Source: Perna viridis
Lineage: Eukaryota
NCBI GenBank assembly: GCA_037379345.1
Contig: CM074512.1
Span: 32,178,001-32,242,000 of the forward strand
Direction: 5' to 3'
DNA: 64,000 bases
In this document: positions 8,608-26,845 of the stretch, one piece after another
Position numbering within the stretch: position 1 is the stretch's first letter
How the letters are laid out: every line of letters begins with the position of its first letter
The notes under the pieces: generated by a model
Databases searched by the model: none
What the model saw: only the letters and a program-made list of their open reading frames with translations
Told to the model about the DNA's origin: nothing
Program-made: the position numbers and the translations under genes

Positions 8608-9554
8608 AATTAATGTACATGACTATTATACAGGCTTTGGTACAAGAAGGTAATTAATACTGTAAGATGCGCACACAAAAAAAAGTGCAGATTTATATAA
8701 GCATATAGATTGGTCGGTTGGATAATTATTGTTTAATATTCCTTGGCAGGTATTTCATGCATTCCATGTCGAAGCATTTTGATTTGAAAATGTTTTGAAT
8801 GCTCAAAACCCTGATATTTTACAAGCCGCACAACGTATGCCATGTGACGCCCATTAAACTTCGACTATTTTCTTTTCCCTTTTTACTCGTCTCAAGCAAA
8901 TTCGCCTATTTAAATAATTAAAACAATAAATCCAAGAACAAAAGTTCTAAAAACAGATGGAATCGCATTAGAACTATTCCATTACAAGAGTCATGCACAC
9001 ATGCAAAAGTAAATTCTTCCTTTACACGTCATTTCCATGATAAAATTGGTGCCAATTGCTATATATCATGACATGAAACAAATTTATCTATTAGCTAGTT
9101 GACCGACATGAGCCTAAATAACAAAGATACAAGGAACCAATGATGTTTACGAGTTACAACAAAGGTTCAATGAGCGCTTATCCGTTGCTGGGTCTTAAAG
9201 CTCATTAATTTTTCGATCATATGCTTTTCGATCAAATTTATGTAAACTGAGATTGCCGAATTCTAGTTTTGTAAATACAGAATGGAATGACTTGCGTAGT
9301 ATCAAGTTATAATTGCTTTGTATACGTTTTATCAGTTTGTACATATACAGCTGAATGCGTGCCAAATAGTTTTAAATATTTTAAAGACAAGTCATAATCA
9401 ACAATCAATATTGCACGGTATAGATAAATGTTAATATTTGGTGATATTCATTCAATTTTTGATACATACTGAATAATATCACCAAAAGACTATTTCGCTG
9501 TATCTGTGTATAATGTTTTGGGTCCAGCTGCAGCCAACCCTGAGTATTTCATCG

Positions 9555-9652
9555 TCGTTCATTGAAGACCCATGGGTGACCTTGAGCTGACATTTTACAT
9601 CCGTTGGTGTTGTTGTCTCTTTGACATATCTACGAGATCCATTCTATTTATA
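9555..9652 (+). repeat. Solo fragment homologous to the 3' end (37980-38080) of the Penelope-like element
   Basis: cattgaagacccat..ttgagctgacatttt..ttgtctctttgacatat..atccattct matches cattaaagatccat..ttgagttgacatattt..ttgtctttttgatata..atccattct. Confidence 0.55.
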
Positions 9653-10163
9653 TTGTATGCATTATATATGTAAAAGTGAAACATTTGTTAAATTTAGTAA
9701 ATAAAGTTATGTGATAGTTAGCATAAAAATGTGTTTGGGAGCCATAAATGGTTATTAATTTTTAACAAATGTCATTTTAAACGAGTTTTTCGAAATAATC
9801 GGATTTCATTTTCCAGATCCTATCAGTAATGATGGTTGTATCTTCAAAAGCAAAGAGTATGCATCCGCTTATCATACCAGAATATCTGTTGCACACTGCT
9901 CTCTGTATAAGTTCTTAAGGTTCTGTGTTTTTTGTTTGTTTGATTGATTGATTGATTGTTTTCTTCTTTAAGTTTCAAGTATCAACATGAATACAGTGAA
10001 CTCGAAACTTGAGCGGCCGATGCTATAGTTAACAGATTTCATTGCTGGTCGTTCCATCGCGTAAAAAGGTGGGGAATCGAACTCTCATTAAAAAAAAAAT
10101 AACATTCTCGGTTTACTTTTATTTTATTTATCTTACTAATGTATTTCTCTTACAGATTTCGCT

Positions 10164-11799
10164 ATGAATATAAATCAAAACGCATTTCTCCTTTGTCCCA
10201 TCTGTGAGAAGGAGTACGATGACAGACGAGGTGCTCCGAGGGTACTGCCATGCCTCCACACCTGTTGTTCAACATGTCTACAAGATCTCTTGAATGACAA
10301 CGAACTATGCTGCCAAGAGTGTCAAACTAGGTTTGCCAAAACAATTGATGGAATAGAAGCTTTTCCTATGGACACTGCCATTAGAAATTATTATGATTTC
10401 ATCCGGGTTCAACTTCGGCCACAGGAGGTCCCATGTACCGACTGCCCAGATGAAGCAAATGCACAGACATTTTGTAGAGATTGCTTCCTGTTCATGTGCA
10501 TAGAATGTACACGTGCTCATAAAAGAACCCATGTGACGAAAAAGCACATTCTTAATTCTATTGAGGATATGCGTGATTCAGATATCCGAGACTTCCATCG
10601 AAAAGACACATGTCAAACGAAAGGTCACGAGGACCAGATATTTACATTTTACTGTGATAAACGAGGCTGTGATGTCCCAATCTGTACACTTTGTGCTGTT
10701 TCTGGGCACAACCAACAGCAAGGACATATTATCAGAAATCTCAGCGAAGTATACGAGGATAGTAAATCAACCGTCCAAAATGTCCTCAGGGATATCAATA
10801 ACCGCGGAAATCCGATGTCTGATGCTGTATCTCAAATCGAGTCAGTTGTATATGACCTCACAGAGAAGGAGTCTGAAGTTAACAGTGAAATAGATACGAT
10901 TTTTGACAGATTTCATAGATTGTTAGAAGATCGCCGAGATAGGTTGCATAGAGAGGTTGAAAACTACTGCCAGTCGAGGAAACGCGACCTTCAAGAGAAA
11001 GTTACTGAATTGAAAAACTTTTCTACAAATGTTAAGACAGCTGTGGATTTTGCAAACAGAGTAACTTCTTATACTACAGCATCAGAGTTTCTTTTGTTAC
11101 GGGATATATTGCTCAAGAGAATATTGGAGCTTCAAAATCACAGAGTATCTATCCCAGCCAAAGATGACATGTATTTAAGATTCTACAGGGGTGCAAGTGA
11201 CGATTCTTTTGCAGATCTAGTAAATTCCATTGGCAACGTAGTAACCAAGGATGGTTCGAACTCTTCAAGAATGTCTGAAAGTCTCAATTCCAGTTTCCTA
11301 AGTGAAAGTTACAAAAACTCAAAACGAAGTAGCTTTAGTGACTTCCAAATAGATCTTCAGAACGGTTTAAATAACTTAAATGGAACAAACGACAACCAGG
11401 GTCAAAAATTCAACATAATAGGCGACTTTAGGAATTCCAAAACGGATTATCAATCGCCGAAATCGAGTGCACCTCAGCCATTAAAATCGGTCGAGCTAGA
11501 GGGAATTAAACCAAATTTACAAAAATCTTCGTATTTTATACCAAACCAACAACAGTCTGAATACCGTCTACTGGCAGAAAATGAAAGTGGTGTTGTGCAG
11601 CAAGAGAACTCTGTGGAAACTATAACACCCAAACAAAACCAGACATCAGAGCACGAATTCGAGACAGCTAGAAACGAACTTAGAGATGCAGCTAAAAGCA
11701 TGAAAGAATCAAAGTTCATGCCAGTTGTAAATGGTTCCATGGAATCACCATCTCCAATCCAGGATAAGCCGAGCTTTTTCAGCCAACGGTTGTCAAGTC
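10164..11799 (+). CDS. TRIM coding exon 1: RING-HC + B-box1 + B-box2 + coiled coil + Ser/Asn-rich linker
   Basis: RING C3HC4: CPIC..PRVLPCLHTCCSTC..CQEC. B-box1: CTDC..FCRDCFLFMCIECTRAH..TKKH. B-box2: C..H..FYCD..CDVPICTLC..H..H. Heptad-rich helix follows. Acceptor ttacag ends 10155; donor C|GTAAGT at 11799/11800. Confidence 0.96.
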
Positions 11800-14700
11800 G
11801 TAAGTGTTAAAGTGTTTTTTTATACTTAGAACTTTGCTGCTCCTTGAATACTACTTATTTGTGTGGTTCGGTACATACAACACATAAGCATATACTAATT
11901 ACTAGTAAATCATAGTAGAGTTTACTAAGATTAGTTAAGGAGCGTGTAATGTCTTTGTGTGTTCGTATTTTGGTATATCCTGTACAAATATGCATTATTT
12001 CTAATTCACAATATGTATTCGCTTTTTGTGATTTATCATTCACTCAGAGGTTTTCAAACCACAACGCATTCGCTTGATTATTTCAGAAACTTGTTACTAC
12101 ATGTATTTTTTTTTTCAAAATAGAATTATGTATTCGTTTTTCTCTGTTTACGCATGTTTTGATTGTTCATACCATCCATGTGTTTTGTCATGCATGCTTT
12201 TCATGTCAGAAAATTTCGATTTTTCTTTATTTCCACCCAATTTTCTACTTTCGTTGTTTTGTCAGTCTAGCATAATCACTTTATGTTTTTAACAAGCATG
12301 CTTCATACTAAAACAATTTCGTTTCATGCATTTTACATTAGCTTCCGAAAACTCGCATGACATTTTACCAGAAAGCGCAGAACGAGACTTTTCAGGAGAC
12401 GACACTCAGCGCGAGACTCTCGTACAGCAGGCGGGATTAAGTGACTGTCTTCGTAAGTATCAGCAATGCCGTGTGCAAGAGAGAAGGAATTAACTAAATA
12501 TAAGTTGCATGTGTGATTTGTTGACACAGAATAAATATTTCGGCAATTTCGGAGAATATACATTCTAGGCAAGCAAGTTGCAAAACTTTAAACTATATAG
12601 ATGTACTTTAGGTTTTAGACAACGTAGGCTCACTATATGCATAAATATTTCGAGATCAATCCATCAATTATGGCGCTCTGGGAAACTGCAATTGCATGCA
12701 CAAATAATCTTTATTTCTTGGTAAGCAACCGCTCTAGTTAACACATTACTATCCATATTTATTTTGAATAATATTTGTGTTCTATTCAGAAAGTCTTGAA
12801 AATAGTGGCGAATTACCGAAGTTAATATTTCCGGGTAGGTTCGACAAAAGCATAGTAAGATGCTTTCAAACACTTTGAAGACTGAAGTTGTTACAAAATT
12901 GACAAAAAGGTTGTGAGTTTTAAAGTTTTCAGTTGATATGCTCTTTGAAATAGTTCGGACTGGAAAACGGTTAAAGTCAAATTACCAGGATTGTAAGAAG
13001 TTTTAAACCGGGTCATGCTTCTATAAACAACTTGTCGTACGTTCTAAGAAGCATAAACTGTCTGAAACTTCGCATGTAGAGATTTATAACATTGTCTCAG
13101 CACCTGTTTTTTTTTATTATTATAAACAAATATATATACTTTGTTTTCGTCAAAAAGTGTTTGAAAGCAAAGCACTTAAGGGGGTAGACCTAGAATAAGG
13201 GACACAACCCTTAAAAATCATTAGAACGTTTGTACATTTATTCAGCATTTTACATCAATCTCATGTAGCACCAAAGGAACTTGGATTGATTTCATTCTGT
13301 TTACATGAAAGCTTGATAGGCTTTGGTGAAATGAATATGTTACAAACACGTCACTGATTTCTTGAGTTGTGTCCCCTACCCTAGGTCTACCTCCTTAATC
13401 ATAGTGATCGTAATATTAACATTTTGCCAGTAGTTTTTGTGTTAATCATTAATTTCATTCACTGTTTTTAGTTGCGTAGATTTGTTTTCTTGCAGTACAT
13501 CAAAAATTGAATTGTACAGTAACTCGCATCTCATTTTCTGGCTAGAAAAAAAAACAAATGTTTTTTGCTACTTAAATGAATGGAATTTGTTTTCACAAAC
13601 ATGTAGGTTAAGTTACATAATGTACACTGATGTTTTATCCTGATGCACAGGTACTTTTTTAATAGTTCTAGAATACAACGTAGTAGCTAAAATTCCATGT
13701 TATATGTTTTATGTACAGGCAAATAAATTGTATTATTTATTTTAGAATTATTTTTACCAAAATATAAACAATATTTTGTATAATAAGTTGCTATATGTAT
13801 TTACTTTTATGACTTCTTGTAATATTTAAATGCAAAAATCAAATTTAGCAATTAAGTAGAACATAACAATCTGACAACAAAAATTTTCTTGATTTCAAAT
13901 ACGTCAGTATTTTGTACCTTATTTAGAAGTCAATGAGCAATATTATTTCAAACTTAAGTACGAATTTGATAAATTATTTTTTTTCTGAACAAATCTTTTA
14001 TGTTAATCACAGAAATTGAAAATGAAACACTTGAAGCCCTTAGAAGAAGGAGACGTTGTCGAGACAAAAGATCAAATTCTTGCCCTATACCTCCAAGCTC
14101 GAGTAGAAATATCTTAACTATGCTTAAAACGTGGAAACAATACCTTAAATTCAAGACGGGTATGATGTTTGAAACCCGTGTTAAAAGAGTCTCCTAGAAG
14201 CTTGTAACAGTCTTGAGTGGATTAAATAAACAGGAGCTTCGTGTCATTTTCTTACCTTTCCTTTCCAAACAAAACCTCAGTTTCCTCCATTTCCTATACA
14301 GTACAGCAAGTTCGTTCTACTTTTGCTTTGCATGTTGAAATCTGTTTATATTTAAGTGAAAGTAGAATGGAATTGATATGTCATTAAAGCATCGATGATA
14401 ACCTTTTACAACTACTCAATATTTTTAACTATTTCCTGCCTCTTTGACCCGATTTCTTCTATTATATGCTTAAACGGAATTTAGACCATGATTTCACTCT
14501 AAGCATTATTTTATGAAATGTCGTTTAATACAGATTTGTACAAAAATGAACTTAATGATAACTTAAACATATGATATTATATAACCAAATTGTATATCCT
14601 ACAATTAATTTTGTATTGCGTGTTGAATTTCCTTACTCCTATTTTGCCTGTCTTTTAATTGCCTAACATATTGCATGCTTCTATGATCTATATATTTACC

Positions 14701-17700
14701 AACCCTACAGAACATTGTAAAAAAATTATAATCATCAAAACGTTCAAACTTTCTCTTATAATATTAAGTTAAACAATTCAAGAATAAACTGCGAAAAAAT
14801 ATATTGTAAAAATAAATCATACCTTAAAACAATCGTATGTAGTAGGATTTTCTGTTTATTGATTACTTTGTTGTACAGAACGAAGCCAGAATGCTAGACT
14901 TAAATCAGAGCCTTCTCCAGCTGTAGAAGAGAGATCCCCTTCTCCAGAACCAGAGACAGCATTTATGCCTGTTGTATCTCCACGTGCCAATGTACCAGCT
15001 TCTCGTATGTTTTATTATAATAACCAAATGTTGCTATGTATTGATGAGTTTCACCATGTCTAATTGATGGAATTGTAGTTAAGTCAACCACTAAAATTTT
15101 CTGTTCTTCTGTAAAAGGAGTATATTCATTTCTTCTTTTGTACTAACAACACAATAAGGATGCAAATAATTTGTTTTAGTGAAAAGTGGGGATCATTACA
15201 GAGGATTTCCTATGTGCAGGGTTCACATGTGAAAAATGTCCAATTCCTATTTGCATGAAAGTTTTTATTTGATCCCTATAAGCTGTGTTCACACGATTTT
15301 TTAATGAAAACGCCAGTGCGAATATGCATGATAAAATGTCATTGCGAATTCAATTTTGAGGGCAATATATTACAGATTTGACATTTTATGAATGTATGAA
15401 CGAGGCTATTTACCTCAAAACGATATATCTTACTTTTTATAGAGGACACATTTGAGGAAAGTGAAGGTATTTATTGCACGTAAATCCATATCTAGCACAC
15501 TGCATTGCTCTCTGTATTTATTATGTGTGTAATACCACAACACTCGAAGTCCATGCAAGGTCTCCTACCGTTTTGTTGGAACTCCTAGTGTTGATTCGTC
15601 AATTTCTAATGATATTTTGAATTAAAAGACAGTTTTCGTGTCTTTTTTTTTGTGTATATATAAAGTAGCCAGTTGTTTTGACCAAAAATTCAAACTTTTT
15701 AATCTAGAACACCTATCAGGAGAAATATTTGTTTTTAAGGCCGCTTTGAAAACGGTGTTCGTGGCAATTTGTTTTTAAATTTACAAAAATGCCTTCTGTA
15801 TAAAATTTCAAAGCCCCTGTTTTCATATTATTTTGCGGAAGTGTGAAATTATTACTTTCTTACCGTTAACCTTGTTATGATTTTGCTATTGTTATATATA
15901 TAGTATGTGTGCTTCCATATCCACCTTTCCTATAACTATCCTTAGATTCAGCTTAATCAGTCTGATATAATTGAAAAAAAAATAGTAAAAAAAACTCGTC
16001 ATCTTGATTATCATTTTATATATATTTCATATAGTTTTTAATTCACTTTAGAAATTCAAACACTGAAAAGCCGGTATTAACATTTTACTAATGAAAGATA
16101 CCGCTAGAATAAGAAAAATATTTTTGTTTTGATGTAAATATGCTTTATTAGTGTGTAGTGCTACTCCAAATTTTCATCTCTAACTTCCAACGTTTATTTG
16201 TAATTATATATTCGAAAACATTTTATTTGACATCAGAAAGACAAAATTTGTTTAGAACTATGACTATGTCAAACATGAAAAAGAATAAGGGGAAATGTTA
16301 ATTTTCCTTTTTTCTCTTTTTTTAATTGAAAAATGTAACTGTATAGTGATTTATTTCAGTACTTCGAAGGAATGGACAGGTTAACGGCGAGCCAAGAACT
16401 GGTCCTGCAATTTTTAATGATGTAACATGTAAGTCGAAAGGATAAAATGCACAATGATTATATTATTACCTGGTTAAATATATTACTAATTGTATATGAT
16501 ATTCTTAAATTCTTTTTAAATGTTGTTGCATTTGAAAACTAGTACTATGTATATGTGACATATTCTCAATATGTTATAATCGGAGTACTCACGGGGTAAA
16601 ATTATCAGGATGTATAACCATATAAATAAGCATGTTCTCGATATGATTTTGATTTACATTAAGCTGTTTTGTGTCTTACAATAGGTCCAGACTTTTCATT
16701 CGATGTCCTTACCGTTCACGACGAGAGGGAAGTTTCTATTGATGGCAAAATTCTAAGAAACAGAAAAACTGGAAATCCAAATAGCAGCTCAGTATCAAGC
16801 CCAAAACAGTTGAAACAGTACAAGGGTATCATAGGGAACTATTCCTTCCAACAAGAAGGTAAATTCTACTATGAAGTTGATGTTACGTTCAATATCATCC
16901 AGCCCCTCGAGCAGACCTGGTTAGTGTTTGAGCTCGGCCTTTGTAGAAAGGATGAGATAGACAAGCACCACACCGTGGAGCGACATGAATTTGCGAGGTC
17001 ATTTTACGTTGCCAGATACCCAGAAGATGGCAAGCTTGCTCAGGAGTTTTGGCATAATCGGGACCTTAAAGCCCTGGTTCCTTTATGCGACAACAGCCCT
17101 GGTCTAACTGTGGATGTGACGTATGGGGTCTACATCAATACAAGCACAAGAAAAGTAACCGTTGCCGACGTCAAACGAGAGAAAAAGCTTCATACATTTA
17201 CTGATGTTGACTTTTCTAAACCAATGTGGCCGGTATTTGGAACATATAACTCTGATCTGGTCAATGTCATTCTTAGGCTTAGAACTGGAGCTTCTCTTGC
17301 ACAGTTTCCACCATTCCTGAAAGGTATTATATTTTGCCAGTCTACCCCTTATAACTATTGTGAAGGAAAAAACACAAATAAAAGAACACTGATGATTTGC
17401 ATGGTGATCTATGAAAAAAACTGCTGTCTAAGTTTCACTTTCGAGAAACATTGGAATGAATTTTAAAAAGTGATTATCTGCGTTTTTTACTTCAGGTTCT
17501 TGAATTACCAAATATATTTACCATACTTCATTGAATTAATAGTTCGATATCGTTTCATTATCAAAACACGCTTACAATTGCAGAAAGATGTCACAAAAGT
17601 ACATTTGTATCAATTATCATTTAAGTACTAATACATATACAATTCAGACACTGCCAGTGGAAGAGCTAATTCAAGGTACAGAAAAAAACCACCGAACAAT

Positions 17701-20700
17701 GTTTTTTTTTCTTCTACATGATGATACGTATGGGCAGAAAAAGGATCAATAGTCGGTTTAATTGATGACCACACCAGTCTAAGATATAAAACTAGCTTCG
17801 ATGATTAAATACAGAATAAGGGTCATCAAATGGTCAACACATGGCACCCGAATGTTTACAAAATTGACGTAAAAACCTTATCAATACTTGAAAATTCGAC
17901 TCAGAGACATTTCGGACCATGACAACCCACTCTTCCTTACCAAAGCTGGACATTTCGGCCCATACATATTTCAGACCATGACAATAGGAGAATGCATGAG
18001 GACAATACAAAATCATATATCAAGTCAATTTTACCAATTTGGATGATACTAATTACAGGGCTGAGAAAAATTATAAAAGGACTTCGGTGCTTGAATTCAT
18101 GATTCCTCGAGATCGTTTATGAGTAATCAAGGGAACCAAGGTTATAGCGGTAACCAAAATAATGTAATCCAGAGACAAAGACCAGACATGGAAAACAGAC
18201 ATACACAACAAAGAACATAAAGGAACTAAAATCATACATACAAATTAACAAAAGCAAATGATTAACTCGGACTCCACTATAAACTGGGAGCATGGACCAG
18301 GTGCACCGGTAGGGTAAGCGTCCTCTGTTTTTTTTAGAAACACCCGCCGAGTTGCTCATAAAAAGTCAAGTCCGGGGTAGACAAACGAGGAAAGGAAAAC
18401 CGTGACCCGTTGAATAAATCAGTTTTCATGTCGCAGATGGATACACCATAACGATCCACGAGTTTTAAGGTTTTAAGGTTTCGCCTTCTTCATATTTGTC
18501 ATTTTATATGATTTTTTCTTATCTATAAGGACATGAAGCATTCACAACTCCAGGAAAACAGGACATGCTTGAACCTGACAAGAGACTACAAGCAGAGAAT
18601 GAAAGAGGCATGATTCAACGTCAGATAAGTATGCCAACACGAATGCCTGGTGGTCAACCAAATCTGCTTTCACTTTCTCCAAGACAAAACTTGTCTAGAA
18701 GTTCAGAAAATATCAACGAAACTCCATTCGACAGTGCAAAGAGTGGTCTAAGAAATACAACGGTTAAACCATCCAAGTCTAAGTTTGTTCATGTAACCAA
18801 TGGTAACTGCTCACCCCGAGATAGACCAAAAGCCAATTTTAACAGAGCGAGAAGTCGTAAGTATTTTTTAATGTTATCTACTAGAAACTTATTTTTTTTA
18901 CAAAAAAGAACGGTCGCTTCAAATTATTAGTGATATTCATTCCTTTTTCGTAGAGTCATTCAGTTCATATAGTACGCTTTTGCATTTTACTATAATTCAA
19001 AAGAATCCATCCTGCTCAATCAGTAAATACGCTTATATGTTTTCACTTCAAATACATTACAATTGTTTACTTGTATCGTTGACTTGTGAGATGGACAACT
19101 GCTTAACAACTTTAATATTTCTTAATAATGTAGTTTATTTTAGCATTAATTTTGATTTGGTGATGGTGTATAACTTCGCAACATTTTTTTTCTCATAAGT
19201 ATCCAGATAACAATAACATAATGCTCCAAAAAGGAGGTCATGCTGCAAATGGGCGTATACAAAAAAAAAGTGCATGTTTATTTCTGTTTTTTTTTTTTTT
19301 TTTGGTTTTTTTTTTGACAAAACAAAACGTTATCGTTCTTTGTCAAATTGAAAACGCACATTTGTATTAAGATATGCAGTTCTTTTATGACATAGATTAC
19401 GCAATTTCAAATTGTAAAAATGGTGCAATATTTATTTCCTCCCTCTAAAAGACAAAATTGTATGAACAATACACTAGCAATAATTATGCGTAAACACTCG
19501 AAATTGGAAATTTGTAGAAGTGATTATCATATAACTTTTGTTAGGTTAAAGCAAGAACAGTATTCAGAAAGGAATATATTTTAATAAATACACATGCAGC
19601 TTCTTTATAAAGTTTTGTATTATTCAAACGAAATCAAAATGTATTTACATTATTTTGAGGGGAAAAGACTCCACACCGTTTGTATATGTATTCGCCACGA
19701 AACTTCTGTCCTAAAGCATGACTTACCTTTCTATCTAACCATATACTAATACTTCATAACCAAGTACCATTTACCATAGCACCAGTTACCAAGACTCAAC
19801 CTGTACCTGGGAAACTCCGAGCCTCAGCGTCTACCTCGCAGTTAGATACCCTCTCCTCTCGACCAATGGGATTGGGAGATTTTATGAGTAAGTTGTACTA
19901 GTTGTGTGACTAATTGCATGCCAGCATGACACGTACGATCTGAAAGTTAACATTTTTCATGACAAATTTCATGATCAAAAATCGAGTTGAACTTTAATTT
20001 TTATTTGTCAGAGATATAAATGTTTATTTTTATTTGTTTTATAATCTCGGTATGGAAAGATCCCTAATTGTTAATAAAATCTTTTGGGTTGTATACATAA
20101 ATAAAGAGCCCTTTCAGTTTGATTGAATTCCGAAAGACTTTTTTAAGTGACTAGCATATTACGTCATTAGAATTCAAAACTAATTGAAGAATTTTATGAG
20201 CATGGAAAATAAGATACGCATGACATATCTTACTGAGTGTATCATTACTGATAAATCATGTATGTAGACGTTGAATAGTTCCCATGGAAATTACAAATGA
20301 TTGAAATTTTTCATACGTTGATTACACACGTGTGAATTTTATCTTTTGATTTTTTTTTAAATAATTCAGAAGAGCTAGAAAAGAAAGGACAACTACCAAA
20401 CGTTGTACAGCCTGGTATGGCAGATGTTTCCACAAAGCACTCTTTTATAATCACTCATGTAGCATTGCCATTATACAAATTATATAATCATGCATATATG
20501 TGTGTATCCTCAACCAGTGATCGACCATTTGAAATTTGATTTGGGTGAATAATCTTTCTGCTATCTTTTTCAAAGATGACTTTATTTTGTATATATTAGG
20601 TCGTTAGGAAGTCTGAATTTGAATTTACAAATGTAATTACAACACCACCTTCAAATTAGAATGGTCGTGTCACTCAGGAATCATGTACAGAATGTATAAA

Positions 20701-23700
20701 AATATATATCTTTTGAAATATGAGTCAAAAGTGTATAGTTAGCGTTCCTTATGACCCGCTACTGGTGTTCTTCATCATTTATGTTTCAACAAGATAATTT
20801 GAGGTTTAATTTGTATATTTTGTATATATATTTCACCGGCATGAATTCTAATGCAAGAATGGTAATGTTTTAGACTTCTTTTTTAGTATCTAACCAGATT
20901 TTAGTTAGACGTTAAACATTAGATTTTTCTGAAATTTTTAGCAGTAGATGTATATATATATTCGAGTAGGGTTTTACCCACGCTTAAAATTGCACATTAT
21001 ATTATTCACAGAGAGAAGTTTGAGTCAGACTGGAGAAAAATCCTTTCAACCAACGTCAGAACGTTCCTTTAAACCCATAACCTCTCCTCTCAACCAACGA
21101 AATTCTTGTAAGTACTTAAAAAAAAGAAGCAAATCATTTCAGTACATTTCGTCTTTAGATTTAAGAGTTATTTCTCTTTGCACTATACAATATTATTAAA
21201 GCCTTCTTTTTTCATGGCCATCACTTTACTTTTTTTAGACGACGCCGACGATGATGACGACGAAGGTAAATGTAGGCCAATATGTGGTCGTTGATGCATT
21301 CATTCATACACCATGTTTAATTAACATAAGCATGCAATAATTTATTTATGGTCTCAATTGTAACTTAATGTTTATCTCCTACCGTTTATCCTTAAATAGC
21401 TTTTCACTGTTATCTCATCTCTCTCTTTTGACATACACAATTACTGTACTTAATTCGTTTATCTTAACTTAGTCTTTTTACTCGATATCTGATCCAAGGA
21501 TTTCACATACATTGTTGTATGTATATGTTTAACTAACAATATTTAAGCATCACAATATTGAACATTGAATTTAATGTTATCATTTCTCAGAATATTTCCT
21601 AACCCGATTCAAGTCGTTCACTTATTTATATCCCTTAAATGTTGGAATGATCTTTCTTTCACTTGATTTAATCATTTTTCAAAATATTGCACCATCTTTT
21701 CAATTTCAATGCATTTTGCTTTTGCTGTAAAAGCATACCATTTTGTTAGATTCTAGGGATGACGCTTTGCTTGCGGCTAAACTAGATACATTGCCTGTAT
21801 ATAAATAGAAAGTTCTTACATACATCTCTTATTACATCAAATTATTGTATTTATTTTTTCACAAATATTAACATTATTTGCTTTTCAACGAACAAGGTAA
21901 GTTTTACACCCCCATTTTACATACACGATAAGATTATATAGCTATTCAACACATTTTACATAGAGAAAACTTAAGCGATTTGTTTAACCATGTTATGTCT
22001 TTTACAGCCATATTGTTCATATCCTATACTTATTTTCTATTGCCATTTTAGATATTTGTTGTGTGTTCGAAACTATTTTTTTTCTCTTTCCGAATCCGTG
22101 TGCAGTGTAACAGTTTTGTATGTTTTGTTTTATGTCCCGTCAGCAGGATAGGAGATTGTAGGCCTGGCTTTTAAAATGTCTGGTTTCGATATGTTTTTAA
22201 GCTTTTACTCCCATTGTAGAATGTTTCACGGCATATTTGTGCTTATCCGTTTAATATAAAATCAGAGAAATAACACACATTTACTCAGGCCTTAGATACA
22301 TGTATTCTTCTACAATAAATAATGGCGGTTATTTTACTAATCTGATCAGAAAGTGTCGCGTATTTAAGGCCTCATATTCTTCGTTTTAACACTTTTTTGG
22401 TATTTTATACGTATTTAGTTCCTTTTTACCTTCTTAATGTGACTTCGTTTTACTTATTTATTATTCATGATAAAGAAATGTTCCCTATAATTCAGTTGTA
22501 AAATTTCTGAAGGAATCCATCAAAAATTGAGATTGGCCTTATTTTGGACGATATACGAAGGTGCATTTTTGGAGTTTCACCATATCTGTTCACGTTTCTA
22601 TCTTTTTCAAAACGTCAATAAGATTTAGATTTTTGAAATCAGTTTACATGACGTCACAACACTTAACTAGGGGATATAAAATTATCCTAATTTGCCAAAG
22701 AGAACCCGCAATAAGAAGACTTGTACAAATCAAATTAAATCATGCAGAAAATGTCAAGTCGACGCTTTTGCAAAAGACATGCTTTCAAAACAAACACATC
22801 TCATATTATTTCCCCTTTTTATCTATTTGTTAGTATTTATGAAGAGTACAAGCTCTGAGGAGAGTAAACCAAGACCACCACCTCAAGGTGAAATACAATG
22901 TAAGTATTTAATATCTGTTATTTGTGTGTAGAAATGGGAGTGTTAATTTGAATAAAATGAACCACAACATACACTTTATGATTGTTAGTATATTTTTAAA
23001 TGAGATCGTTTACCTTTTCACTTTGGTACAAGTTTATAAAATAAAGATATTTTAACCAAAGATTTAAATGAGCACTTAAAATAAGCTGAGATTGTCACCA
23101 TGACCTGATCTTCGGTTGTGGAGTATCCGTTTACAATGTGACGAACGACAACCATCTTTATCGATGTCATTCCACTTTCACAGGACCGACCACCTTCTTT
23201 CTCGATGTCTTTCCTCTTTCACCGGTCCGATCACCAGCTTTATAGATGTATCATTTCTTTCATCAAACCAACAACTACCCTAATATATGTCTTTCCTTGT
23301 TCATCGAATCGAACGACCACTTCTTTTATTGATGTCTTTCCTCTTTCCCTGAACCGCCCACCACCTTAAGAGTTGTCATTTCTTTCACCGAACCGACCAC
23401 CACCTTTAAAGATATCTTTCCTCTTCCATTGAACCGACCACCACCTTTATAGATGTCATTCCTCTTTCACCGATCAGACCACTGCCATTTTACATGTCTT
23501 TCTTTTTTTCACCGAACTGACTGCTACCTTTACAGATGTCTTTCGTCTTTCACCGAACCGACCACTGCCATTTTAGATTTCTTTTCTCTTTCACTGCATC
23601 GACCACCACCTTGCACAGATGTCATTTCTTACACCGAACTTACCACCACATTTATTGATGTCTTTCCTCTTTCATTGAACCGACCATCACTTTTGTAGAT

Positions 23701-25246
23701 ATCTTTCGTCTTTCACTGCACTGACCACCGCCTTTATAGATATCTTTACTCTTTCACTGCACCGACCACTGCCATTTTAGATTTCTTTCCACTTTCACTG
23801 CATCGACCATCACCTTGTATAGATGTCATTTCTTTCACCGAACTTACCACCACTTCCTTTATAGATAACTTTCGTCTTTCCCCGGGCCTGACATCTCCGA
23901 CAAATCGGATTGGTGTGTTGCAAACTGTAGGAATTGCTCACCATCAAATGCGCATTTAGTGGGACTCGAGCTGTTCGTTTTGATTTTTGTGTGTGAATTT
24001 CTGGTATACGATGTGTTTTCGTCTGTTATTTTTTTTTACTTTGAATTCCAACGTTGCTTCGTCCTTTGGTTTTCCTTTATTTTATACCGTTGATTTCTCT
24101 CTGTAATGAGGAAAGAGGTGATGACAGAGAACATGGTAGGAAGTCACAAATGACAACACATTGTACATACCATTTGTATGTAAAATTTACATTAGATGAC
24201 AAACTGTAGCTAAAGTATCGTAGGTGGTCTATTTCTAACATCTTTAGTACATATTGAGGCTTATTTGAACTGTGTCATTCAGTGAAAGAAATGTACTGTA
24301 GTGGTTTTGAGACAATCTAAATTTACAATGTACTTTGTAATGTGGTGTTTTTTTCAGACTTGTTATTGTGATTTGTGGTGGAGTCGATCAGCAAAATTAT
24401 GTAGTATTTTAAAATACCAGCCAAGAAAAAAACAAATAATCACTTTGTTTTCGAAATTGCAAAAAACTGGGACTATTATCTCTTTACTCTGAACATCTAT
24501 ATTTAATGTACTAGAACTTGAAAAAGCTGTCCAACATGCCTCGCTGTCGTTTTGAGTTTTCTTAACTTTACCTAGGCAAAAAGAAAACAATTTTTCTCTT
24601 CGCAGGTCCTGACTTTTTATTTGATGTCGATACATGTCATGAAGACAGAGAGGTGTCGTCTGATGGTAAAATGCTGAAAAATCGAAAGACCGGGAAACCG
24701 TCTTCAAAGAACCCAAAGAAGCAACTAAAACAATACAAGGGCATACTCGGCGGACTTTCCTTCAAAGATGGTGGTAAATACTACTACGAAGTTGTTGTAA
24801 CCTTCAACATTATTCAACCTCTAGAGCAGACGTGGTTGATATTCGAAATTGGCCTTTGCAGACGAGAGGATGTTGATAAGCATCACACTGTAGAGCGCCA
24901 TGAGCATGCGCGGTCTTTTTATGTAGCTAGGTACCCGGAAGATGGCAAGTTAGCCCAGGAATTTTGGCACAATCGCGATCTTTTGGCCTACGTGCCTCTG
25001 AGCGAGAACAAAGCTGGTCTTACTGTTGAGGTCACTTACGGTTTTGTAGTAGATACAAAAAGAAAGAAATGGGTAATAGCGGATGTAAAGAAACAGAAGA
25101 AACTTCACACATTTTCTGGTGTCGATTTCTCAAAACCAATGTTGCCTGTATTTGGTACATACAACCCTGACCTAATAAATGTTGAAATGAAACTAAAAAC
25201 TGGGAAACAAATTGCGTCTTTCCCATCATTTCTCAAAGGACTATAA
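10164..25246 (+). CDS. Spliced TRIM (RBCC) E3 ubiquitin ligase-like gene with two tandem PRY/SPRY(B30.2)-like domains; join(10164-11799,12342-12452,14013-14159,14879-15004,15443-15466,16360-16428,16685-17323,18530-18856,19780-19887,20370-20414,21012-21107,21239-21265,22834-22899,24606-25246), 1353 aa if all exons are used
   Basis: All 13 introns are GT-AG and phase 1. All internal exons are multiples of 3 and stop-free in frame. The summed length of 4062 nt runs from ATG 10164 to TAA 25244-25246. Domain motifs were read directly from the translation. Confidence 0.85.
12342..12452 (+). CDS. TRIM linker exon (SENSHDILPESAERDFSGDDTQRETLVQQAGLSDCL)
   Basis: ttttacattag acceptor, C|GTAAGT donor, 111 nt, phase 1-1, open in frame. 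Confidence 0.75.
13180..13394. mobile_element. 215-bp MITE with TTAA target-site duplication (Kolobok-like ends) in a TRIM intron
   Basis: TTAA|GGGGGTAGACCTAGAATAAGGGACACAAC ... GTTGTGTCCCCTACCCTAGGTCTACCTCC|TTAA. Confidence 0.85.
14013..14159 (+). CDS. TRIM linker exon with basic cluster (IENETLEALRRRRRCRDKRSNSCPIPPSSSRNILTMLKTWKQYLKFKT)
   Basis: aatcacag acceptor, G|GTATGA donor, 147 nt, phase 1-1, open in frame; may be a cassette exon. Confidence 0.7.
14879..15004 (+). CDS. TRIM linker exon (ERSQNARLKSEPSPAVEERSPSPEPETAFMPVVSPRANVPAS)
   Basis: ttgtacag acceptor, C|GTATGT donor, 126 nt, phase 1-1; paralogous to exon 21012-21107. Confidence 0.85.
15443..15466 (+). CDS. TRIM acidic micro-exon (DTFEESE)
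   Basis: tactttttatag acceptor, GAAG|GTATTT donor, 24 nt; positional and compositional paralog of 21239-21265. Confidence 0.75.
16360..16428 (+). CDS. TRIM pre-SPRY exon (VLRRNGQVNGEPRTGPAIFNDVT)
   Basis: ttatttcag acceptor, T|GTAAGT donor, 69 nt; splicing creates the Cys of CPDF; paralog of 22834-22899. Confidence 0.85.
16685..17323 (+). CDS. PRY/SPRY(B30.2)-like domain, copy 1
   Basis: FDVLTVHDEREVSIDGK (PRY-like), GKFYYEVDV, FELGLC and MWPVFG (SPRY-like); acceptor ttacaatag, donor AAG|GTATTA; 639 nt; roughly two-thirds identical to copy 2. Confidence 0.92.
17496..17503 (+). CDS. Putative alternative terminal micro-exon (…LKG-S-stop) giving a single-SPRY isoform of 919 aa
   Basis: Strong acceptor cgttttttacttcag| followed by GT TCT TGA; produces FLKGS*, mirroring FLKGL* at the end of copy 2. 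Confidence 0.6.
18121..18362 (-). mobile_element. Dispersed ~240-bp repeat family, copy A (probable non-autonomous retroelement 3' end)
   Basis: Reverse complement of copies at 26626 and 59682 (GAGGACGCTTACCCTACCGGTGCACCTGGTCCATGCTCCCAG...CCCTTGATTACTC). Confidence 0.85.
18530..18856 (+). CDS. TRIM exon starting the duplicated module; paralogous to the 3' end of coding exon 1
   Basis: RLQAENERGMIQ~RLLAENESGVVQ, FDSAKSGLR~FETARNELR, SKFVHVTNG~SKFMPVVNG; same AGTC|GTAAGT donor; acceptor ttcttatctataag; 327 nt. Confidence 0.88.
19780..19887 (+). CDS. TRIM linker exon (PVTKTQPVPGKLRASASTSQLDTLSSRPMGLGDFM)
   Basis: ttaccatag acceptor, A|GTAAGT donor, 108 nt, phase 1-1. Confidence 0.78.
20370..20414 (+). 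CDS. TRIM linker exon (KELEKKGQLPNVVQP)
   Basis: Poly-T tract plus aattcag acceptor, G|GTATGG donor, 45 nt, phase 1-1. Confidence 0.7.
21012..21107 (+). CDS. TRIM linker exon (ERSLSQTGEKSFQPTSERSFKPITSPLNQRNS)
   Basis: ttcacag acceptor, T|GTAAGT donor, 96 nt; begins ERS and contains F-x-P-x-x-SP like 14879-15004. Confidence 0.85.
21239..21265 (+). CDS. TRIM acidic micro-exon (YDADDDDDE)
   Basis: tactttttttag acceptor, GAAG|GTAAAT donor, 27 nt. Confidence 0.8.
22834..22899 (+). CDS. TRIM pre-SPRY exon (VFMKSTSSEESKPRPPPQGEIQ)
   Basis: tttgttag acceptor, T|GTAAGT donor, 66 nt; splicing creates the Cys of CPDF. Confidence 0.85.
23140..23882 (+). repeat. Degenerate minisatellite, ~40-41-bp unit, ~18 copies, in the last TRIM intron
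   Basis: Consensus ~CACCGAACCGACCACCACCTTTATAGATGTCTTTCCTCTTT repeated head-to-tail. Confidence 0.9.
24606..25246 (+). CDS. PRY/SPRY(B30.2)-like domain, copy 2 (terminal coding exon)
   Basis: tttttctcttcgcag acceptor; CPDFLFDVDTCHEDREVSSDGK, GKYYYEVVV, FEIGLC, MLPVFG; TAA 25244-25246. Confidence 0.93.
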
Positions 25247-25570
25247 GCGAAAGTCGTTCTTCACGGAAGGCTTGCCAAACATAGTGCCATTATTTTTCTA
25301 GTTTACATATAACAAATTTATCATAGTATTTTATGACTGTCATTATTTGTATTTGCTTTATGAATGATTTTGAAAGATTAAGAAGAATAATAGTATTTTC
25401 TCTGTTGTGAGAAAATACATTTGCACTTGTGTGTCTAAATTGTGAGGTTCATCTTAGCGCTATGATACAGATGATACTGCTCTGATTAATTATTATTGTA
25501 GATCAGCAGTAAGAAATAGGAAAAGGAAACACCTCTACTAAGGTTTCAGAAGTATTTATATTTTATACTG

Positions 25571-25576
25571 AATAAA
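25571..25576 (+). terminator. Candidate polyadenylation signal of the long TRIM isoform
   Basis: AATAAA ~325 nt after the stop, followed by T/GT-rich sequence; another AATAAA lies near 26119. Confidence 0.4.
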
Positions 25577-26625
25577 ATAGAGGACATTTATATGTGTATT
25601 TACCCTTGTAGATGCATTTGTTCTAAATTGTGCTTGTTAATTTGCATTTAGTTATTTTTTTTAATTATATATTTACTGTATACAACTTTTATGTATTTTT
25701 CTTATTTACTTTATCCGTCCAATTAATTAATTGTTTTGTTATTGGAATATTGTACGTTTTTCTAAAGTTGATTTTTGTGCTTTAAAATTTTTTATTCGTT
25801 TATAGTATTTCCAGCCTATTTTTCGTCGCTAGTTTGATATATGAATTATGCAAGTAAAAAGCATTATGTTGTAACTTCTTTATTTCTTAGACATTTATTT
25901 ATAACATAGATAATAATGTTTTCAAAGATCAAATAGTTAATACACTCCAGTTGCATAAATATTGCGAAACAGCAAATGTATTAGGGGTAAAATGTATCTC
26001 TTATGCACTTGATCTGCTGTGATTGAAATATCACATAACTTTTGAATTATCTGCTATAGCTTCTAATTTTTTTGACATTTTCCATTCTGACTTAGTATCT
26101 ACTCTACAATCACTGACAAATAAAATATATTTGTCGGTTTCTAAGATGAGATCTTTCTCTGATTGATTTAATTAGTTCTGGCGTGATTTTAGAGGTTCTT
26201 GAAGTATGATGGTTACTTAAGAATCAAAGGCGCTGTTGGTATGAATAGTTGCTTCTACCATTCTTATTTTCTCCACAAATAGTAATTTTCTTCAATCATG
26301 ACTGTCTTATTTATGTTCACTCTGTGTGCGAAAAATACTATTGCGATAGGTGTTTTCGGTATTCATTTAAACAAGTTCACTTTAAATTTAATTTTTGATT
26401 TCTCAATTTTACCGCTGTGTACTTTTTTGGTCGCGAAAATCAACAGTGTCTTCTGTTTCTGTGTCAATGACACTGATGGTCCTATTATTGATTTTCAATA
26501 CGTAAAGTGGGAGGTTCTATACCTATATTTTTTTTAGCATACCTGATTACGAATGTAGCCATGTAAAAGAATTACTGTGACAAAAAGTTTTTTTTTAGAT
26601 TATATTGATTTGAAAAATAATTTTG

Positions 26626-26845
26626 AGAAAAAGCAGAGGACGCTTACCCTACCGGTGCACCTGGTCCATGCTTCCAGATTTTAGTGGAGTCCGAGTTGCT
26701 CATTTACTTTTGTTACTTTGTATGTATGATTTTAGTTACTTTATGTTCTTTGTTGTGTATGTCTGTTTTCCATGTCTGGTCTTTGTCCCTGAATTACATT
26801 CTTTTGATTACCGCTATAATCTTGATTCCCTTGATTACTCTTTGA
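26626..26845 (+). mobile_element. Dispersed repeat family, copy B
   Basis: Near-identical to copies A and C. Confidence 0.85.

What the first reader, a model, noticed from the sequence alone, without database searches (positions are those of the whole stretch)
10164..25246. TRIM with an internally duplicated multi-exon 'linker + SPRY' module: tandem double-B30.2 architecture
Seen: the region from the 3' end of coding exon 1 through SPRY-1 (~11560-17323) is repeated at 18530-25246 with matching exon order. Both copies run AENE/SKF..V.NG exon, two short exons, ERS..FxP..SP exon, acidic micro-exon ending GAAG|GT, V..PR exon, and CPDF..FLKG SPRY exon. I see no similarity between the introns, so the event is old and both copies are maintained. 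The duplicate had to recruit a new acceptor (18530) inside former exon-1 sequence. Established: class C-IV TRIMs carry one PRY/SPRY directly after the coiled coil, and this N-terminus resembles TRIM45/56/71-type RBCCs that normally end in filamin/NHL domains. Inference: a dimer would display four SPRY-like heads on linkers of ~350 and ~220 residues, an avidity or dual-target sensor architecture I do not recognise as described.
Basis: partly seen in the sequence, partly recalled or inferred. Interest (0 to 1): 0.75.

Follow-up and report, generated by a model that had tools for sequence, protein, structure and literature searches.

The report
Mussel TRIM gene with two SPRY heads
This is one mussel gene for a ubiquitin-ligase-type TRIM protein in which the "flexible linker plus target-binding SPRY domain" unit was copied in tandem long ago, so each protein chain carries two binding heads instead of the usual one.

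Summary

**Gene structure.** Window 10164-25246 (+) is one 14-coding-exon gene of 3960 nt, giving 1319 aa if every exon is used. All 13 introns are GT..AG and phase 1.

**Single transcript.** Spliced contigs from 4 of 4 runs, from 4 studies, join 17323 to 18530. One 3732-nt contig runs from exon 4 through SPRY-1 into module 2.

**Fold.** The SPRY-2 exon models at pLDDT 97. Its best PDB matches are the PRYSPRY domains of TRIM65, TRIM25, TRIM21, MID1 and butyrophilins.

**Age and selection.** The two heads share 149 of 210 residues. Synonymous sites are saturated and dN is 0.22. Each head is closest to its own counterpart in Mytilus, so the duplication is old and both copies are kept.

**Distribution.** Single-head orthologues turned up in 12 other bivalve species. 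The two-head form was seen only in mytilids: 18 of 18 Mytilus models and one unnamed transcript-derived protein. RefSeq lists it as "uncharacterized protein".

**Literature.** Four paper searches found no description.

**Verdict.** This is a real, conserved new variant of a class-IV-like TRIM. What the two heads bind was not tested.

The scan noted this same stretch once more (s1-766601).

The parts
10164..11799 (+). Coding exon 1 (1636 nt): start codon, RING, two B-boxes, coiled coil and the first ~180 residues of disordered linker 1. An acceptor about 8 nt upstream of the ATG implies a 5'UTR exon further upstream.
   Evidence: Open frame. Pfam zf-C3HC4 scores 23.8 bits (cut-off 21) and zf-B_box 24.6 bits (cut-off 24.1, 2 stretches). 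423 of 545 residues are identical to M. galloprovincialis P0154. The donor GT at 11800 is seen. The upstream acceptor is seen. The junction to exon 2 has no RNA check.
12342..12452 (+). Exon 2 (111 nt, phase 1-1), a linker-1 cassette and paralogue of exon 9.
   Evidence: AG/GT ends and 22 of 36 residues identical to P0154. It is present in only 3 of 18 Mytilus models. No RNA check here.
12790..12834 (+). Exon 3 (45 nt, phase 1-1), a linker-1 cassette and paralogue of exon 10.
   Evidence: AG/GT ends and 12 of 14 residues identical to P0154. Against E10, 1 of 2000 shuffles reached the score. Present in 6 of 18 Mytilus models. No RNA check here.
14879..15004 (+). Exon 4 (126 nt, phase 1-1), the 'ERS' linker exon and paralogue of exon 11.
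   Evidence: Contig pieces cover 14879-15004 in X3, X9 and X12. Joints 15004->15443 and 15004->16360 are. Against E11, 3 of 2000 shuffles reached the score.
15443..15466 (+). Exon 5 (24 nt), an acidic micro-exon that is alternatively included.
   Evidence: Joints 15004->15443 and 15464(+2)->16358 occur in X3, X9 and X12. The skipping joint 15004->16360 occurs in X1 and X9. Present in 13 of 18 Mytilus models.
16360..16428 (+). Exon 6 (69 nt). It ends with the first PRY strand of head 1.
   Evidence: Joints into 16358/16360 and 16428->16685 occur in 4 of 4 runs. 15 of 22 residues are identical to P0154.
16685..17323 (+). Exon 7 (639 nt): PRY/SPRY (B30.2) head 1. It ends in a phase-1 donor (AAAG|GTATTA) instead of a stop codon.
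   Evidence: Contigs cover 16685-17320 in 4 of 4 runs. 180 of 212 residues are identical to SPRY-1 of P0154. Pfam SPRY scores only 16.3 bits, E 0.01. The orthologous segment 604-826 of P0163 models as a beta-sandwich at pLDDT 85-96.
17324..18529 (+). The inter-module intron (1206 nt), GT..AG, removed in the transcript.
   Evidence: The joint 17320->18527, read as GT..AG with the cut 3 places right (17323->18530), appears in one contig each of X1, X3, X9 and X12, with 255 letters on the shorter side.
18530..18856 (+). Exon 8 (327 nt): first exon of module 2 and paralogue of the exon-1 tail. Its acceptor lies in what is exon-1 interior in module 1.
   Evidence: Contigs cover 18527-18856 in 4 of 4 runs. 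tblastn to 11529-11801 gives E 8.5e-7. 0 of 2000 shuffles reached the score. 75 of 108 residues are identical to P0154.
19780..19887 (+). Exon 9 (108 nt), a linker-2 cassette holding the conserved GLGDF motif.
   Evidence: The joint 18856->19780 occurs in 4 of 4 runs, with 108 letters on the shorter side in X12. 30 of 35 residues are identical to P0154. Present in 9 of 18 Mytilus models.
20370..20414 (+). Exon 10 (45 nt), a linker-2 cassette.
   Evidence: AG/GT ends and 10 of 14 residues identical to P0154. No joint was listed although the exon lies inside the laid stretch. Present in 5 of 18 Mytilus models.
21012..21107 (+). Exon 11 (96 nt), the 'ERS' linker exon of module 2 and the most conserved piece of the protein between genera.
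   Evidence: 30 of 31 residues are identical to P0154. AG/GT ends. Outside the laid stretch.
21239..21265 (+). Exon 12 (27 nt), the acidic micro-exon of module 2.
   Evidence: AG/GT ends and 6 of 8 residues identical to P0154. Present in 3 of 18 Mytilus models. Outside the laid stretch.
22834..22899 (+). Exon 13 (66 nt). It would supply the first PRY strand of head 2, but that strand has diverged in this species.
   Evidence: AG/GT ends and only 10 of 21 residues identical to P0154. Outside the laid stretch.
24606..25246 (+). Exon 14 coding part (641 nt): PRY/SPRY (B30.2) head 2, with stop codon TAA at 25244-25246. The 3'UTR follows.
   Evidence: AlphaFold2 pLDDT 97.0 and pTM 0.93. Foldseek top hits are TRIM65, TRIM25, MID1, TRIM21 and BTN PRYSPRY at probability 1.00. 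A profile against PDB sequences gives MID1 at 1.6e-12. 182 of 212 residues are identical to SPRY-2 of P0154.
17497..17504 (+). Candidate alternative terminal coding piece. An acceptor-like CAG at 17494-17496 is followed by 8 coding nt that would close the frame just after head 1. Unproven.
Evidence: No joint 17323->17497 is among the 15 joints listed (3 more were not shown). Contigs at 17460-17843 (X1) and 17479-17744 (X3), depth about 4, start upstream of that acceptor.

Best explanation
One gene of a mytilid mussel encodes a TRIM-type RING E3 ligase. Its N-terminus has a RING, two B-boxes and a coiled coil. An ancient tandem duplication inside the gene copied the unit 'disordered linker with conserved short motifs + PRY/SPRY (B30.2) domain'.

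Shown here:
- The first SPRY exon lost its stop codon and ends in a phase-1 donor. This donor is spliced to a phase-1 acceptor in the copy of the exon-1 tail, so a single reading frame runs through both modules.
- Every intron is phase 1, so the short linker exons can be included or skipped without breaking the frame.
- Both heads are B30.2-type sandwiches kept under purifying selection.
- Head 2 and its linker stay close to the single-head ancestor, while head 1 carries more derived changes.

Inferred, not shown:
- The protein dimerises through its coiled coil like other TRIMs and so presents four B30.2 heads on flexible tethers of about 300 and 214 residues.
- The RING ubiquitinates whatever the heads capture.
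- The two heads have partly different ligand preferences. Head 2 would keep the ancestral ligand and head 1 would bind a modified or second one, with splice-tunable spacing between them.

The confidence given (0.8) is for the architecture and the single two-head product. For the diverged-ligand part alone I would say about 0.4.
For: Single transcript:
- The joint 17323->18530 (GT..AG) occurs in 4 of 4 runs from 4 studies.
- X12 contig 8 (3732 nt) covers 14879-15004, 16358-16428, 16685-17320, 18527-18856 and 19780-19887, and runs on at both ends.

Frame: 13 of 13 introns are GT..AG and phase 1. The coding sum is 3960 nt.

Orthologues:
- 19 of 35 hits cover the whole two-module region. They comprise 17 M. 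edulis models, one M. galloprovincialis cluster of 54 members, and the unnamed 1297-aa protein P0170 from a 4727-nt Logan contig.
- 18 of 18 Mytilus models hold both SPRY markers.
- No mytilid RBCC-plus-one-SPRY protein is among the 20 hits or the 35.

Fold.

TRIM N-terminus: (helix 193-303 plus 306-324 in P0163).

Selection and age:
- dN is 0.217 against a saturated pS of 0.82.
- The SPRY-1 clade has support 100/99 and the SPRY-2 clade 94/92, each spanning the window species, Mytilus and P0170.
- Only these two close copies exist in the 723-Mb genome. The next paralogue is 41% identical.

Divergence of the heads: of 25 columns fixed differently in the two clades, head 2 keeps the state of the single-head orthologues at 11, head 1 at 3, and 11 are unclear.

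Disordered linkers: pLDDT is about 22-29 over residues 363-603 and 827-976 of P0163.
Against: - Only contigs were laid, not raw reads. Isoform proportions and rare single-head products therefore cannot be judged.
- Three joints were not shown.
- Junctions E1-E2-E3-E4 and E9 through E14 of the window gene rest on homology and splice consensus alone.
- Exon 10 lies inside the laid stretch but no joint to it was listed.
- E3 activity, dimerisation and ligand binding were not tested by any tool.
- The fixed differences between the heads were not mapped onto the known B30.2 binding loops, so 'different ligands' is a guess.
- Pfam does not call SPRY above threshold on either window exon (16.3 bits against a cut-off of 26.3, and no hit).
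- In this species the first PRY strand of head 2 (exon 13) has diverged, with 10 of 21 residues identical to Mytilus.
- The tree leaves SPRY-1, SPRY-2 and scallop+oyster as an unresolved three-way fork.
Confidence: 0.8

Rival explanations
1. Avidity only. Both heads bind the same ligand, and the duplication simply doubles valency to four heads per dimer, with no new specificity. This rival concerns only the inferred ligand part and shares the architecture of the best explanation.
For: 115 of 140 columns fixed within both clades are identical between head 1 and head 2. The heads share 149 of 210 residues. Both are equally conserved against Mytilus, at 180 and 182 of 212 residues.
Against: 25 columns are fixed differently. 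At several positions that are invariant in all 12 single-head orthologues used, head 1 alone changed: positions 126, 132, 149, 187, 193 and 202 of the head-2 numbering. The SPRY-1 stem branch is longer, 0.22 against 0.12.
Confidence: 0.3
2. Mostly single-head products. Because every intron is phase 1, splicing or early termination could give chiefly one-head proteins, and the two-head transcript would be a minor form. The routes would be a stop after head 1 through the candidate piece at 17497 or intron retention, or skipping of module 1.
For: All-phase-1 design. Low-depth contigs lie at 17460-17843 in 2 of 4 runs. Linker cassette exons are used variably.
Against: In 4 of 4 runs the contig holding head 1 passes straight through 17323->18530 without a break. 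No joint to 17497 and no joint skipping exon 7 is among the 15 listed. 18 of 18 Mytilus models carry both heads. No mytilid one-head protein appears.
Confidence: 0.07
3. Two adjacent genes joined only by read-through, or module 2 as a separate gene with its own promoter in 17324-18529.
For: An ATG at 18565 opens a 121-codon frame inside exon 8. The intron holds a repeat with very high RNA-contig depth.
Against: Module 2 has no RING, B-box or coiled-coil exon of its own. The junction uses canonical GT..AG sites in frame in 4 of 4 runs. The same junction is in Mytilus models and in the contiguous 1297-aa frame of P0170. The high depth belongs to an interspersed repeat with at least 3637 candidate copies in the genome.
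Confidence: 0.03
4. Head 1 is no longer a ligand-binding head. It would be a structural or regulatory insert, for example an internal spacer or a decoy that occupies the conserved linker motifs, while head 2 alone recognises the substrate. This rival also shares the architecture of the best explanation.
For: Head 1 is the more derived copy: it keeps the ancestral state at 3 columns against 11 for head 2, and its stem branch is longer. The linker-1 paralogues are less conserved than those of linker 2, at 20 of 41 residues for E4 against 30 of 31 for E11.
Against: Head 1 is as conserved between genera as head 2, at 180 of 212 residues. It models as a complete sandwich at pLDDT 85-96.
Confidence: 0.15

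Closest known systems
Class IV (C-IV) TRIM E3 ligases with one C-terminal PRY/SPRY, such as TRIM21, TRIM25, TRIM65 and MID1
   Same: The domain order is RING, B-box, coiled coil, then a B30.2 domain. The head 2 model matches their solved PRYSPRY domains (Foldseek probability 1.00, TM 0.6-0.77). A sequence profile hits MID1 at 1.6e-12.
   Different: There are two B30.2 domains per chain instead of one. The predicted disordered tethers of about 300 and 214 residues replace a short helical linker. Sequence identity to solved PRYSPRY domains is only 15-20%. By sequence the RBCC is nearer to TRIM3, TRIM2, TRIM28 and TRIM56.
Single-head bivalve orthologues, auto-named 'TIF1-alpha-like', 'TRIM33-like' or 'TRIM56-like' in oysters, scallops, unionids and clams (e.g. 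P0003, P0004, P0005, P0006)
   Same: They share the same RBCC, the same long linker with the GLGDF and ERSF-type motifs, and the same SPRY subfamily at 58-70% identity to head 2.
   Different: They are 749-966 aa long with one head. The 16 hits from 12 non-mytilid species cover only 33-69% of the two-module query.
Mytilus edulis and M. galloprovincialis automatic gene models (XP_071163921.1; LOC143068104 isoforms), named 'uncharacterized protein' or 'TIF1-alpha-like'
   Same: These are the orthologous gene with the same two-module architecture and the same head1-to-module2 junction. Exon 1 is 78% identical and the heads 85-86% identical to the window.
   Different: They come from a different genus or species. 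They are predictions only, and I found no paper describing them.
Other proteins with tandem PRY/SPRY domains in public predictions: fish PYRIN + 3 or 8 PRY/SPRY (P0094, P0029), paddlefish butyrophilin-like + 3 PRY/SPRY (P0117), and bivalve proteins of 400-465 aa made of two copies of this SPRY subfamily with no RBCC (P0021 = C. virginica LOC111133924; P0024 and P0041 = Pinctada; P0075 = Saccostrea)
   Same: There is more than one B30.2-type domain in one predicted chain.
   Different: None has a RING/B-box/coiled-coil N-terminus. Their domains sit back to back without long linkers. Identity to head 2 is 24-34%. I did not check them against RNA, so some may be merged tandem genes.

Membership tests
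TRIM / RBCC family | N-terminal RING finger | tested here: met
   Pfam zf-C3HC4 scores 23.8 bits against a cut-off of 21, over residues 11-53 of exon 1. The Cys/His columns are invariant across 25 homologues.
TRIM / RBCC family | One or two B-box zinc fingers after the RING | tested here: met
   Pfam zf-B_box scores 24.6 bits against a cut-off of 24.1, in 2 stretches. Invariant Cys/His columns run from C91 to H188.
TRIM / RBCC family | Coiled coil directly after the B-boxes | tested here: met
   The AlphaFold2 model of orthologue P0163 has a continuous helix at 193-303 plus 306-324, with pLDDT 79-92. The window sequence is aligned without gaps over that part. Dimerisation itself was not tested.
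Class IV (C-IV) TRIM | C-terminal PRY/SPRY (B30.2) fold | tested here: met
   Head 2 has pLDDT 97. The top 50 Foldseek PDB hits are PRYSPRY/B30.2 domains. A profile against PDB sequences gives MID1 at 1.6e-12, BTN3A1 and TRIM21.
Class IV (C-IV) TRIM | A single B30.2 placed right after the coiled coil | tested here: not met
   There are two B30.2 domains per chain. The tethers are about 300 and 214 residues by exon sums. They are predicted disordered in the orthologue.
Pfam SPRY (PF00622) / PRY (PF13765) | Score at or above Pfam's gathering cut-off | tested here: not met
   The window head 1 exon scores 16.3 bits against a cut-off of 26.3, and the head 2 exon has no hit at E <= 1. The whole M. 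edulis protein reaches 33.2 bits, for head 1 only. PRY was never reached. The domain is therefore a divergent B30.2 recognised by fold and profile, not by Pfam.
Class VII TRIM (TRIM2/3/32/71 type) | C-terminal filamin and/or NHL repeats | tested here: not met
   There is no Filamin or NHL hit in exon 1, in the SPRY exons or in P0001. The more distant relative P0010 has Filamin plus this SPRY.
RING E3 ubiquitin ligase | Ubiquitin transfer with an E2 | not testable with these tools
   This is inferred from the RING motif only.

The most novel reading that the evidence does not exclude
A splice-programmable, two-specificity TRIM sensor. The two paralogous B30.2 heads would recognise different ligands, or two sites on one large target. 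The all-phase-1 cassette exons in both tethers would let the cell tune the reach and spacing of the four heads of a dimer. That would give a coincidence or avidity detector not described for any TRIM.
Probability: 0.2. Interest if true: 0.65.

Novelty: new variant of a known kind. Interest (0 to 1): 0.42.

Why it matters
TRIM ligases are usually described as one recognition domain per chain and two per dimer, and weak binding is compensated by lattice-level avidity.

This gene is a natural TRIM that has kept two B30.2 heads per chain on long flexible tethers across at least three mytilid lineages. It is therefore a ready-made test of how valency and tether length affect target capture.

It is also a clean example of exon-phase-compatible internal duplication: a terminal exon was turned into an internal one by loss of its stop codon and use of a phase-1 donor.

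Bivalves have very large TRIM repertoires and no adaptive immunity, so an unusual recognition architecture there may bear on innate sensing. No immune role was tested here.

Tried and rejected
**Intron homology.** blastn between 11001-18000 and 18001-25600 at word size 7 found only the SPRY exons. The duplication breakpoints could therefore not be mapped.

**Further copies in the window.** There are none.

**Synteny with the CDC20-like piece fused to one M. edulis model (P0159).** Residues 1-88 found nothing in the window at E <= 1e-3. I dropped this line.

**Rfam on 9000-28000.** 0 matches.

**The inverted 220-nt repeats at 18121-18340 and 26621-26840 as a cause of the duplication.** Rejected. 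They belong to a young interspersed repeat with at least 3637 candidate copies at about 95% identity, whereas the duplication has saturated synonymous sites.

**Contig behind P0170.** That P0170 comes from spliced RNA is inferred only from its unbroken 1297-codon frame in a 4727-nt contig.

**Literature.**
- Four searches, read as listings and abstract starts, gave no paper on a TRIM with two B30.2 domains in one chain. Hits for 'two SPRY domains' and 'two PRYSPRY' were TRIM5, TRIM21, TRIM25 and TRIM72 papers by title. I did not open them, and take the phrase to mean the two heads of a dimer.
- In PMC3137616 I read the five passages returned for 'multiple B30.2' and 'tandem'. None describes such a protein.
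- Supplements were closed and not consulted, so a TRIM catalogue in a supplement could list this architecture.

**Not done.**
- The head-specific residues were not mapped onto the B30.2 binding loops, because no coordinates are returned.
Runs and organism are coded, and the genome is 723 Mb in 46 pieces.

**Rows chosen for the tree.**
- I picked 19 proteins by hand.
- I left out further isoforms and the duplicate-species rows P0175, P0176, P0181 and P0182.
- I left out all domain-only fragments.

**Marker count.** It uses exact marker matching. The 18 Mytilus models come from more than one annotation of M. edulis (17 models) plus one M. galloprovincialis cluster representative, so they are not 18 independent observations.

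Full report
**What is in the sequence**

The window's + strand from 10164 to 25246 holds one long open first coding exon and a series of short exons. Two large, similar terminal-type exons lie at 16685-17323 and 24606-25246.
- The two large exons match at 70% nucleotide identity over 591 nt (E 2e-70).
- At protein level 149 of 210 aligned residues are identical.
- The last ~90 codons of the first exon match the exon at 18530-18856 at about 30% identity (E 8.5e-7 within the window; 0 of 2000 shuffles reach the score).
- No third copy exists in the window.
- In the whole 723-Mb genome these two are the only close copies. The next paralogue is 41% identical.
- The introns share nothing detectable.

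**Exon model**

I placed every exon by aligning three returned proteins to the window, then fixing the ends on AG/GT sites. The proteins were M. edulis P0001, M. galloprovincialis P0154, and the unnamed 1297-aa P0170.

There are 14 coding exons:
- E1 10164-11799
- E2 12342-12452
- E3 12790-12834
- E4 14879-15004
- E5 15443-15466
- E6 16360-16428
- E7 16685-17323
- E8 18530-18856
- E9 19780-19887
- E10 20370-20414
- E11 21012-21107
- E12 21239-21265
- E13 22834-22899
- E14 24606-25246

All 13 introns are GT..AG and all are phase 1. The coding sum is 3960 nt, or 1319 codons plus stop.

Module 1 is the E1 tail plus E2-E7. Module 2 is E8-E14. They have the same exon order and near-equal exon lengths: 111/108, 45/45, 126/96, 24/27, 69/66 and 639/641 nt.

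Of the seven paralogous pairs, four are individually above chance and three are not. The three rest on order, length, phase and the clearer similarity of the Mytilus sequences.

Exons were handled one by one.

**Is it one transcript?**

The look-up of sequencing runs listed 20 runs holding part of 16600-19000. I laid the contigs of four of them, from four studies, on 14800-20799.
- In 4 of 4 runs a contig joins 17320 to 18527. This reads as GT..AG with the cut three places to the right, that is 17323 to 18530.
- That joint has 255 letters on the shorter side.
- The runs are only guessed to be RNA, but contigs that skip canonical GT..AG introns are spliced RNA.
- One X12 contig of 3732 nt covers E4, E6, E7, E8 and E9. 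A 22-letter gap in its record between E4 and E6 fits E5. It continues 227 nt upstream and 2212 nt downstream of the laid pieces.
- Joints E4-E5, E5-E6, E6-E7, E7-E8 and E8-E9 were seen. So was the skip E4-E6, in X1 and X9, which makes E5 an alternative micro-exon.

Limits of this evidence:
- Junctions E1-E4 and E9-E14 were not covered or not listed.
- Three joints were not shown.
- Contigs cannot give isoform proportions.

**Relatives**

A full HMMER scan with the head 2 exon found 139 proteins at E <= 0.001.
- The best, P0001 (1258 aa), has two full matches. It is XP_071163921.1, 'uncharacterized protein isoform X14' of Mytilus edulis.

A word-based search with its two-module part gave 35 hits.
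- 19 cover 100% of the query: 17 M. edulis models, one M. galloprovincialis cluster, and P0170 from a Logan contig.
- 16 cover 33-69%. These are one-head proteins of 749-966 aa from 12 other bivalve species (oysters, scallops, unionids, clams).

Other counts:
- All 18 Mytilus models carry both heads and E4, E6, E8 and E13. E2, E3, E5, E9, E10, E11 and E12 vary.
- A search with exon 1, which admits proteins of 300-954 aa, found no mytilid protein with RBCC plus one head. The mytilid-like hits are four exon-1-length frames of 548-616 aa.

**Age and selection**

The window's head 1 is closest to Mytilus head 1 (180 of 212 residues identical). Head 2 is closest to Mytilus head 2 (182 of 212).

In a 24-row tree the four head-1 sequences form a clade (100/99) and the four head-2 sequences another (94/92). 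Both sit with scallop+oyster in an unresolved three-way fork inside a pteriomorph group.
- The duplication therefore predates the split of the window species, P0170's species and Mytilus.
- By parsimony it happened on the mytilid stem. An older origin with loss elsewhere is not excluded.

Between the two copies, pS is 0.82 (saturated) and dN is 0.217. Both have therefore been under purifying selection for a long time.

Of 25 alignment columns fixed differently in the two clades, head 2 keeps the state of the single-head orthologues at 11, head 1 at 3, and 11 are unclear. The linker exons of module 2 are also better conserved: E11 has 30 of 31 residues identical to Mytilus, against 20 of 41 for E4.

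**What the parts are**

Exon 1:
- It scores above Pfam cut-offs for a C3HC4 RING and for B-box, the latter in two stretches.
- Its nearest solved relatives by sequence are TRIM3 (6.5e-20), TRIM28, PML, TRIM56, TRIM2, TRIM32 and TRIM45.

The heads:
- The window head 1 exon has only a sub-threshold SPRY hit (16.3 bits) and the head 2 exon has none.
- With a 40-sequence alignment, head 2 models at pLDDT 97.0 and pTM 0.93.
- Its Foldseek matches are PRYSPRY/B30.2 domains of TRIM65, TRIM25, MID1/2, TRIM21, TRIM7, pyrin and butyrophilins, at probability 1.00, TM 0.6-0.77 and 15-20% identity.
- The alignment's profile finds MID1 (1.6e-12), BTN3A1 and TRIM21 by sequence.

The full-length model of the M. 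edulis isoform P0163 (1200 aa) shows:
- an ordered RBCC at 5-362, with a long helix at 193-324;
- a disordered stretch at 363-603;
- sandwich 1 at 604-826;
- a disordered stretch at 827-976;
- sandwich 2 at 977-1200.

That isoform lacks several cassette exons. By exon sums the window's tethers are about 300 and 214 residues when all exons are used.

**How it most likely works**

Shown: there is one reading frame through two B30.2 heads, made possible because the first SPRY exon ends in a phase-1 donor instead of a stop codon. All exons are phase-compatible, both heads are conserved, and the tethers are predicted to be disordered.

Inferred from what is established for TRIM proteins (recalled, not tested here):
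- The coiled coil forms an antiparallel dimer.
- The RING recruits an E2.
- The B30.2 domains bind the target.

A dimer would thus carry four heads. My preferred reading is that head 2, with its strongly conserved linker motifs, keeps the ancestral ligand, and that head 1 has shifted. A pure gain in valency is the main rival.

Two-gene and mainly-single-head readings are unlikely, but only long-read cDNA can close them. The earlier scan note s1-766601 pointed to the all-phase-1 design and to an 8-nt closing piece after head 1. I confirmed the phases and found the site at 17497, but saw no joint using it.

**Comparison and novelty**

It works like a class IV TRIM, but it fails the class's 'one B30.2 right after the coiled coil' criterion.

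Tandem B30.2 domains do occur in other predicted proteins, none of which has an RBCC:
- fish PYRIN-(PRY/SPRY)n;
- a paddlefish butyrophilin-like protein;
- bivalve proteins made of two copies of this SPRY subfamily.

The two-head gene is already in automatic Mytilus annotations under uninformative names. Four literature searches found no description (passages of PMC3137616 read). Supplements were closed.

I rate it a new variant of a known kind, of moderate interest.

Noticed in passing
window 18121-18340 and 26621-26840: These are two inverted copies, 92% complementary, of a 220-nt interspersed repeat. The genome has at least 3637 candidate copies, and the best 40 are 94-96% identical. RNA contigs pile up on it at summed depths of about 30,000-150,000. 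It looks like a young, transcribed SINE- or MITE-like element. Rfam has no match for it.
   Followed up: partly
window 23142-23880: A tandem array with a 41-nt unit of about 18 copies at 71% matches, with higher-order periods of 122, 163 and 204. It lies in the intron just before the head 2 exon.
   Followed up: no
window 21012-21107 (exon 11): This 31-residue linker exon is predicted disordered in the orthologue, yet 30 of its 31 residues are identical between this species and M. galloprovincialis. That makes it more conserved than the RING/B-box exon (423 of 545) or either SPRY head. It is probably a docking or phosphorylation motif.
   Followed up: partly
window 22834-22899 (exon 13): In this species the stretch that should form the first PRY strand of head 2 has diverged from the motif kept in Mytilus, in P0170 and in the single-head orthologues. 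Only 10 of 21 residues are identical to P0154. Head 1's equivalent (exon 6) keeps the motif.
   Followed up: partly
window 18864-20799: Contigs cover most of the introns between exons 8 and 10 at depths of 5-12, against 9-29 on the exons, in 3 of the 4 runs. This could be unspliced precursor, retained introns or DNA carry-over. I did not resolve it.
   Followed up: no
own genome G000:C8:18811411-18836171 (L006, L007, L010): Three paralogous SPRY-type exons, 26-39% identical to head 2, lie within 25 kb on another chromosome-scale piece. This looks like a local cluster of related genes.
   Followed up: no
proteins P0021, P0024, P0041, P0075 (C. virginica LOC111133924, Pinctada imbricata, Saccostrea echinata): Oysters and pearl oysters have predicted proteins of 400-465 aa made of two back-to-back copies of this same divergent SPRY subfamily, with no RING, B-box or coiled coil. 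This is a second, independent kind of tandem duplication of the domain.
   Followed up: partly
window 10148-10163: A polypyrimidine tract and an AG acceptor lie about 8 nt before the start codon. The first coding exon is therefore not the first exon, and the promoter and 5'UTR exon lie upstream of 10150. I did not locate them.
   Followed up: no
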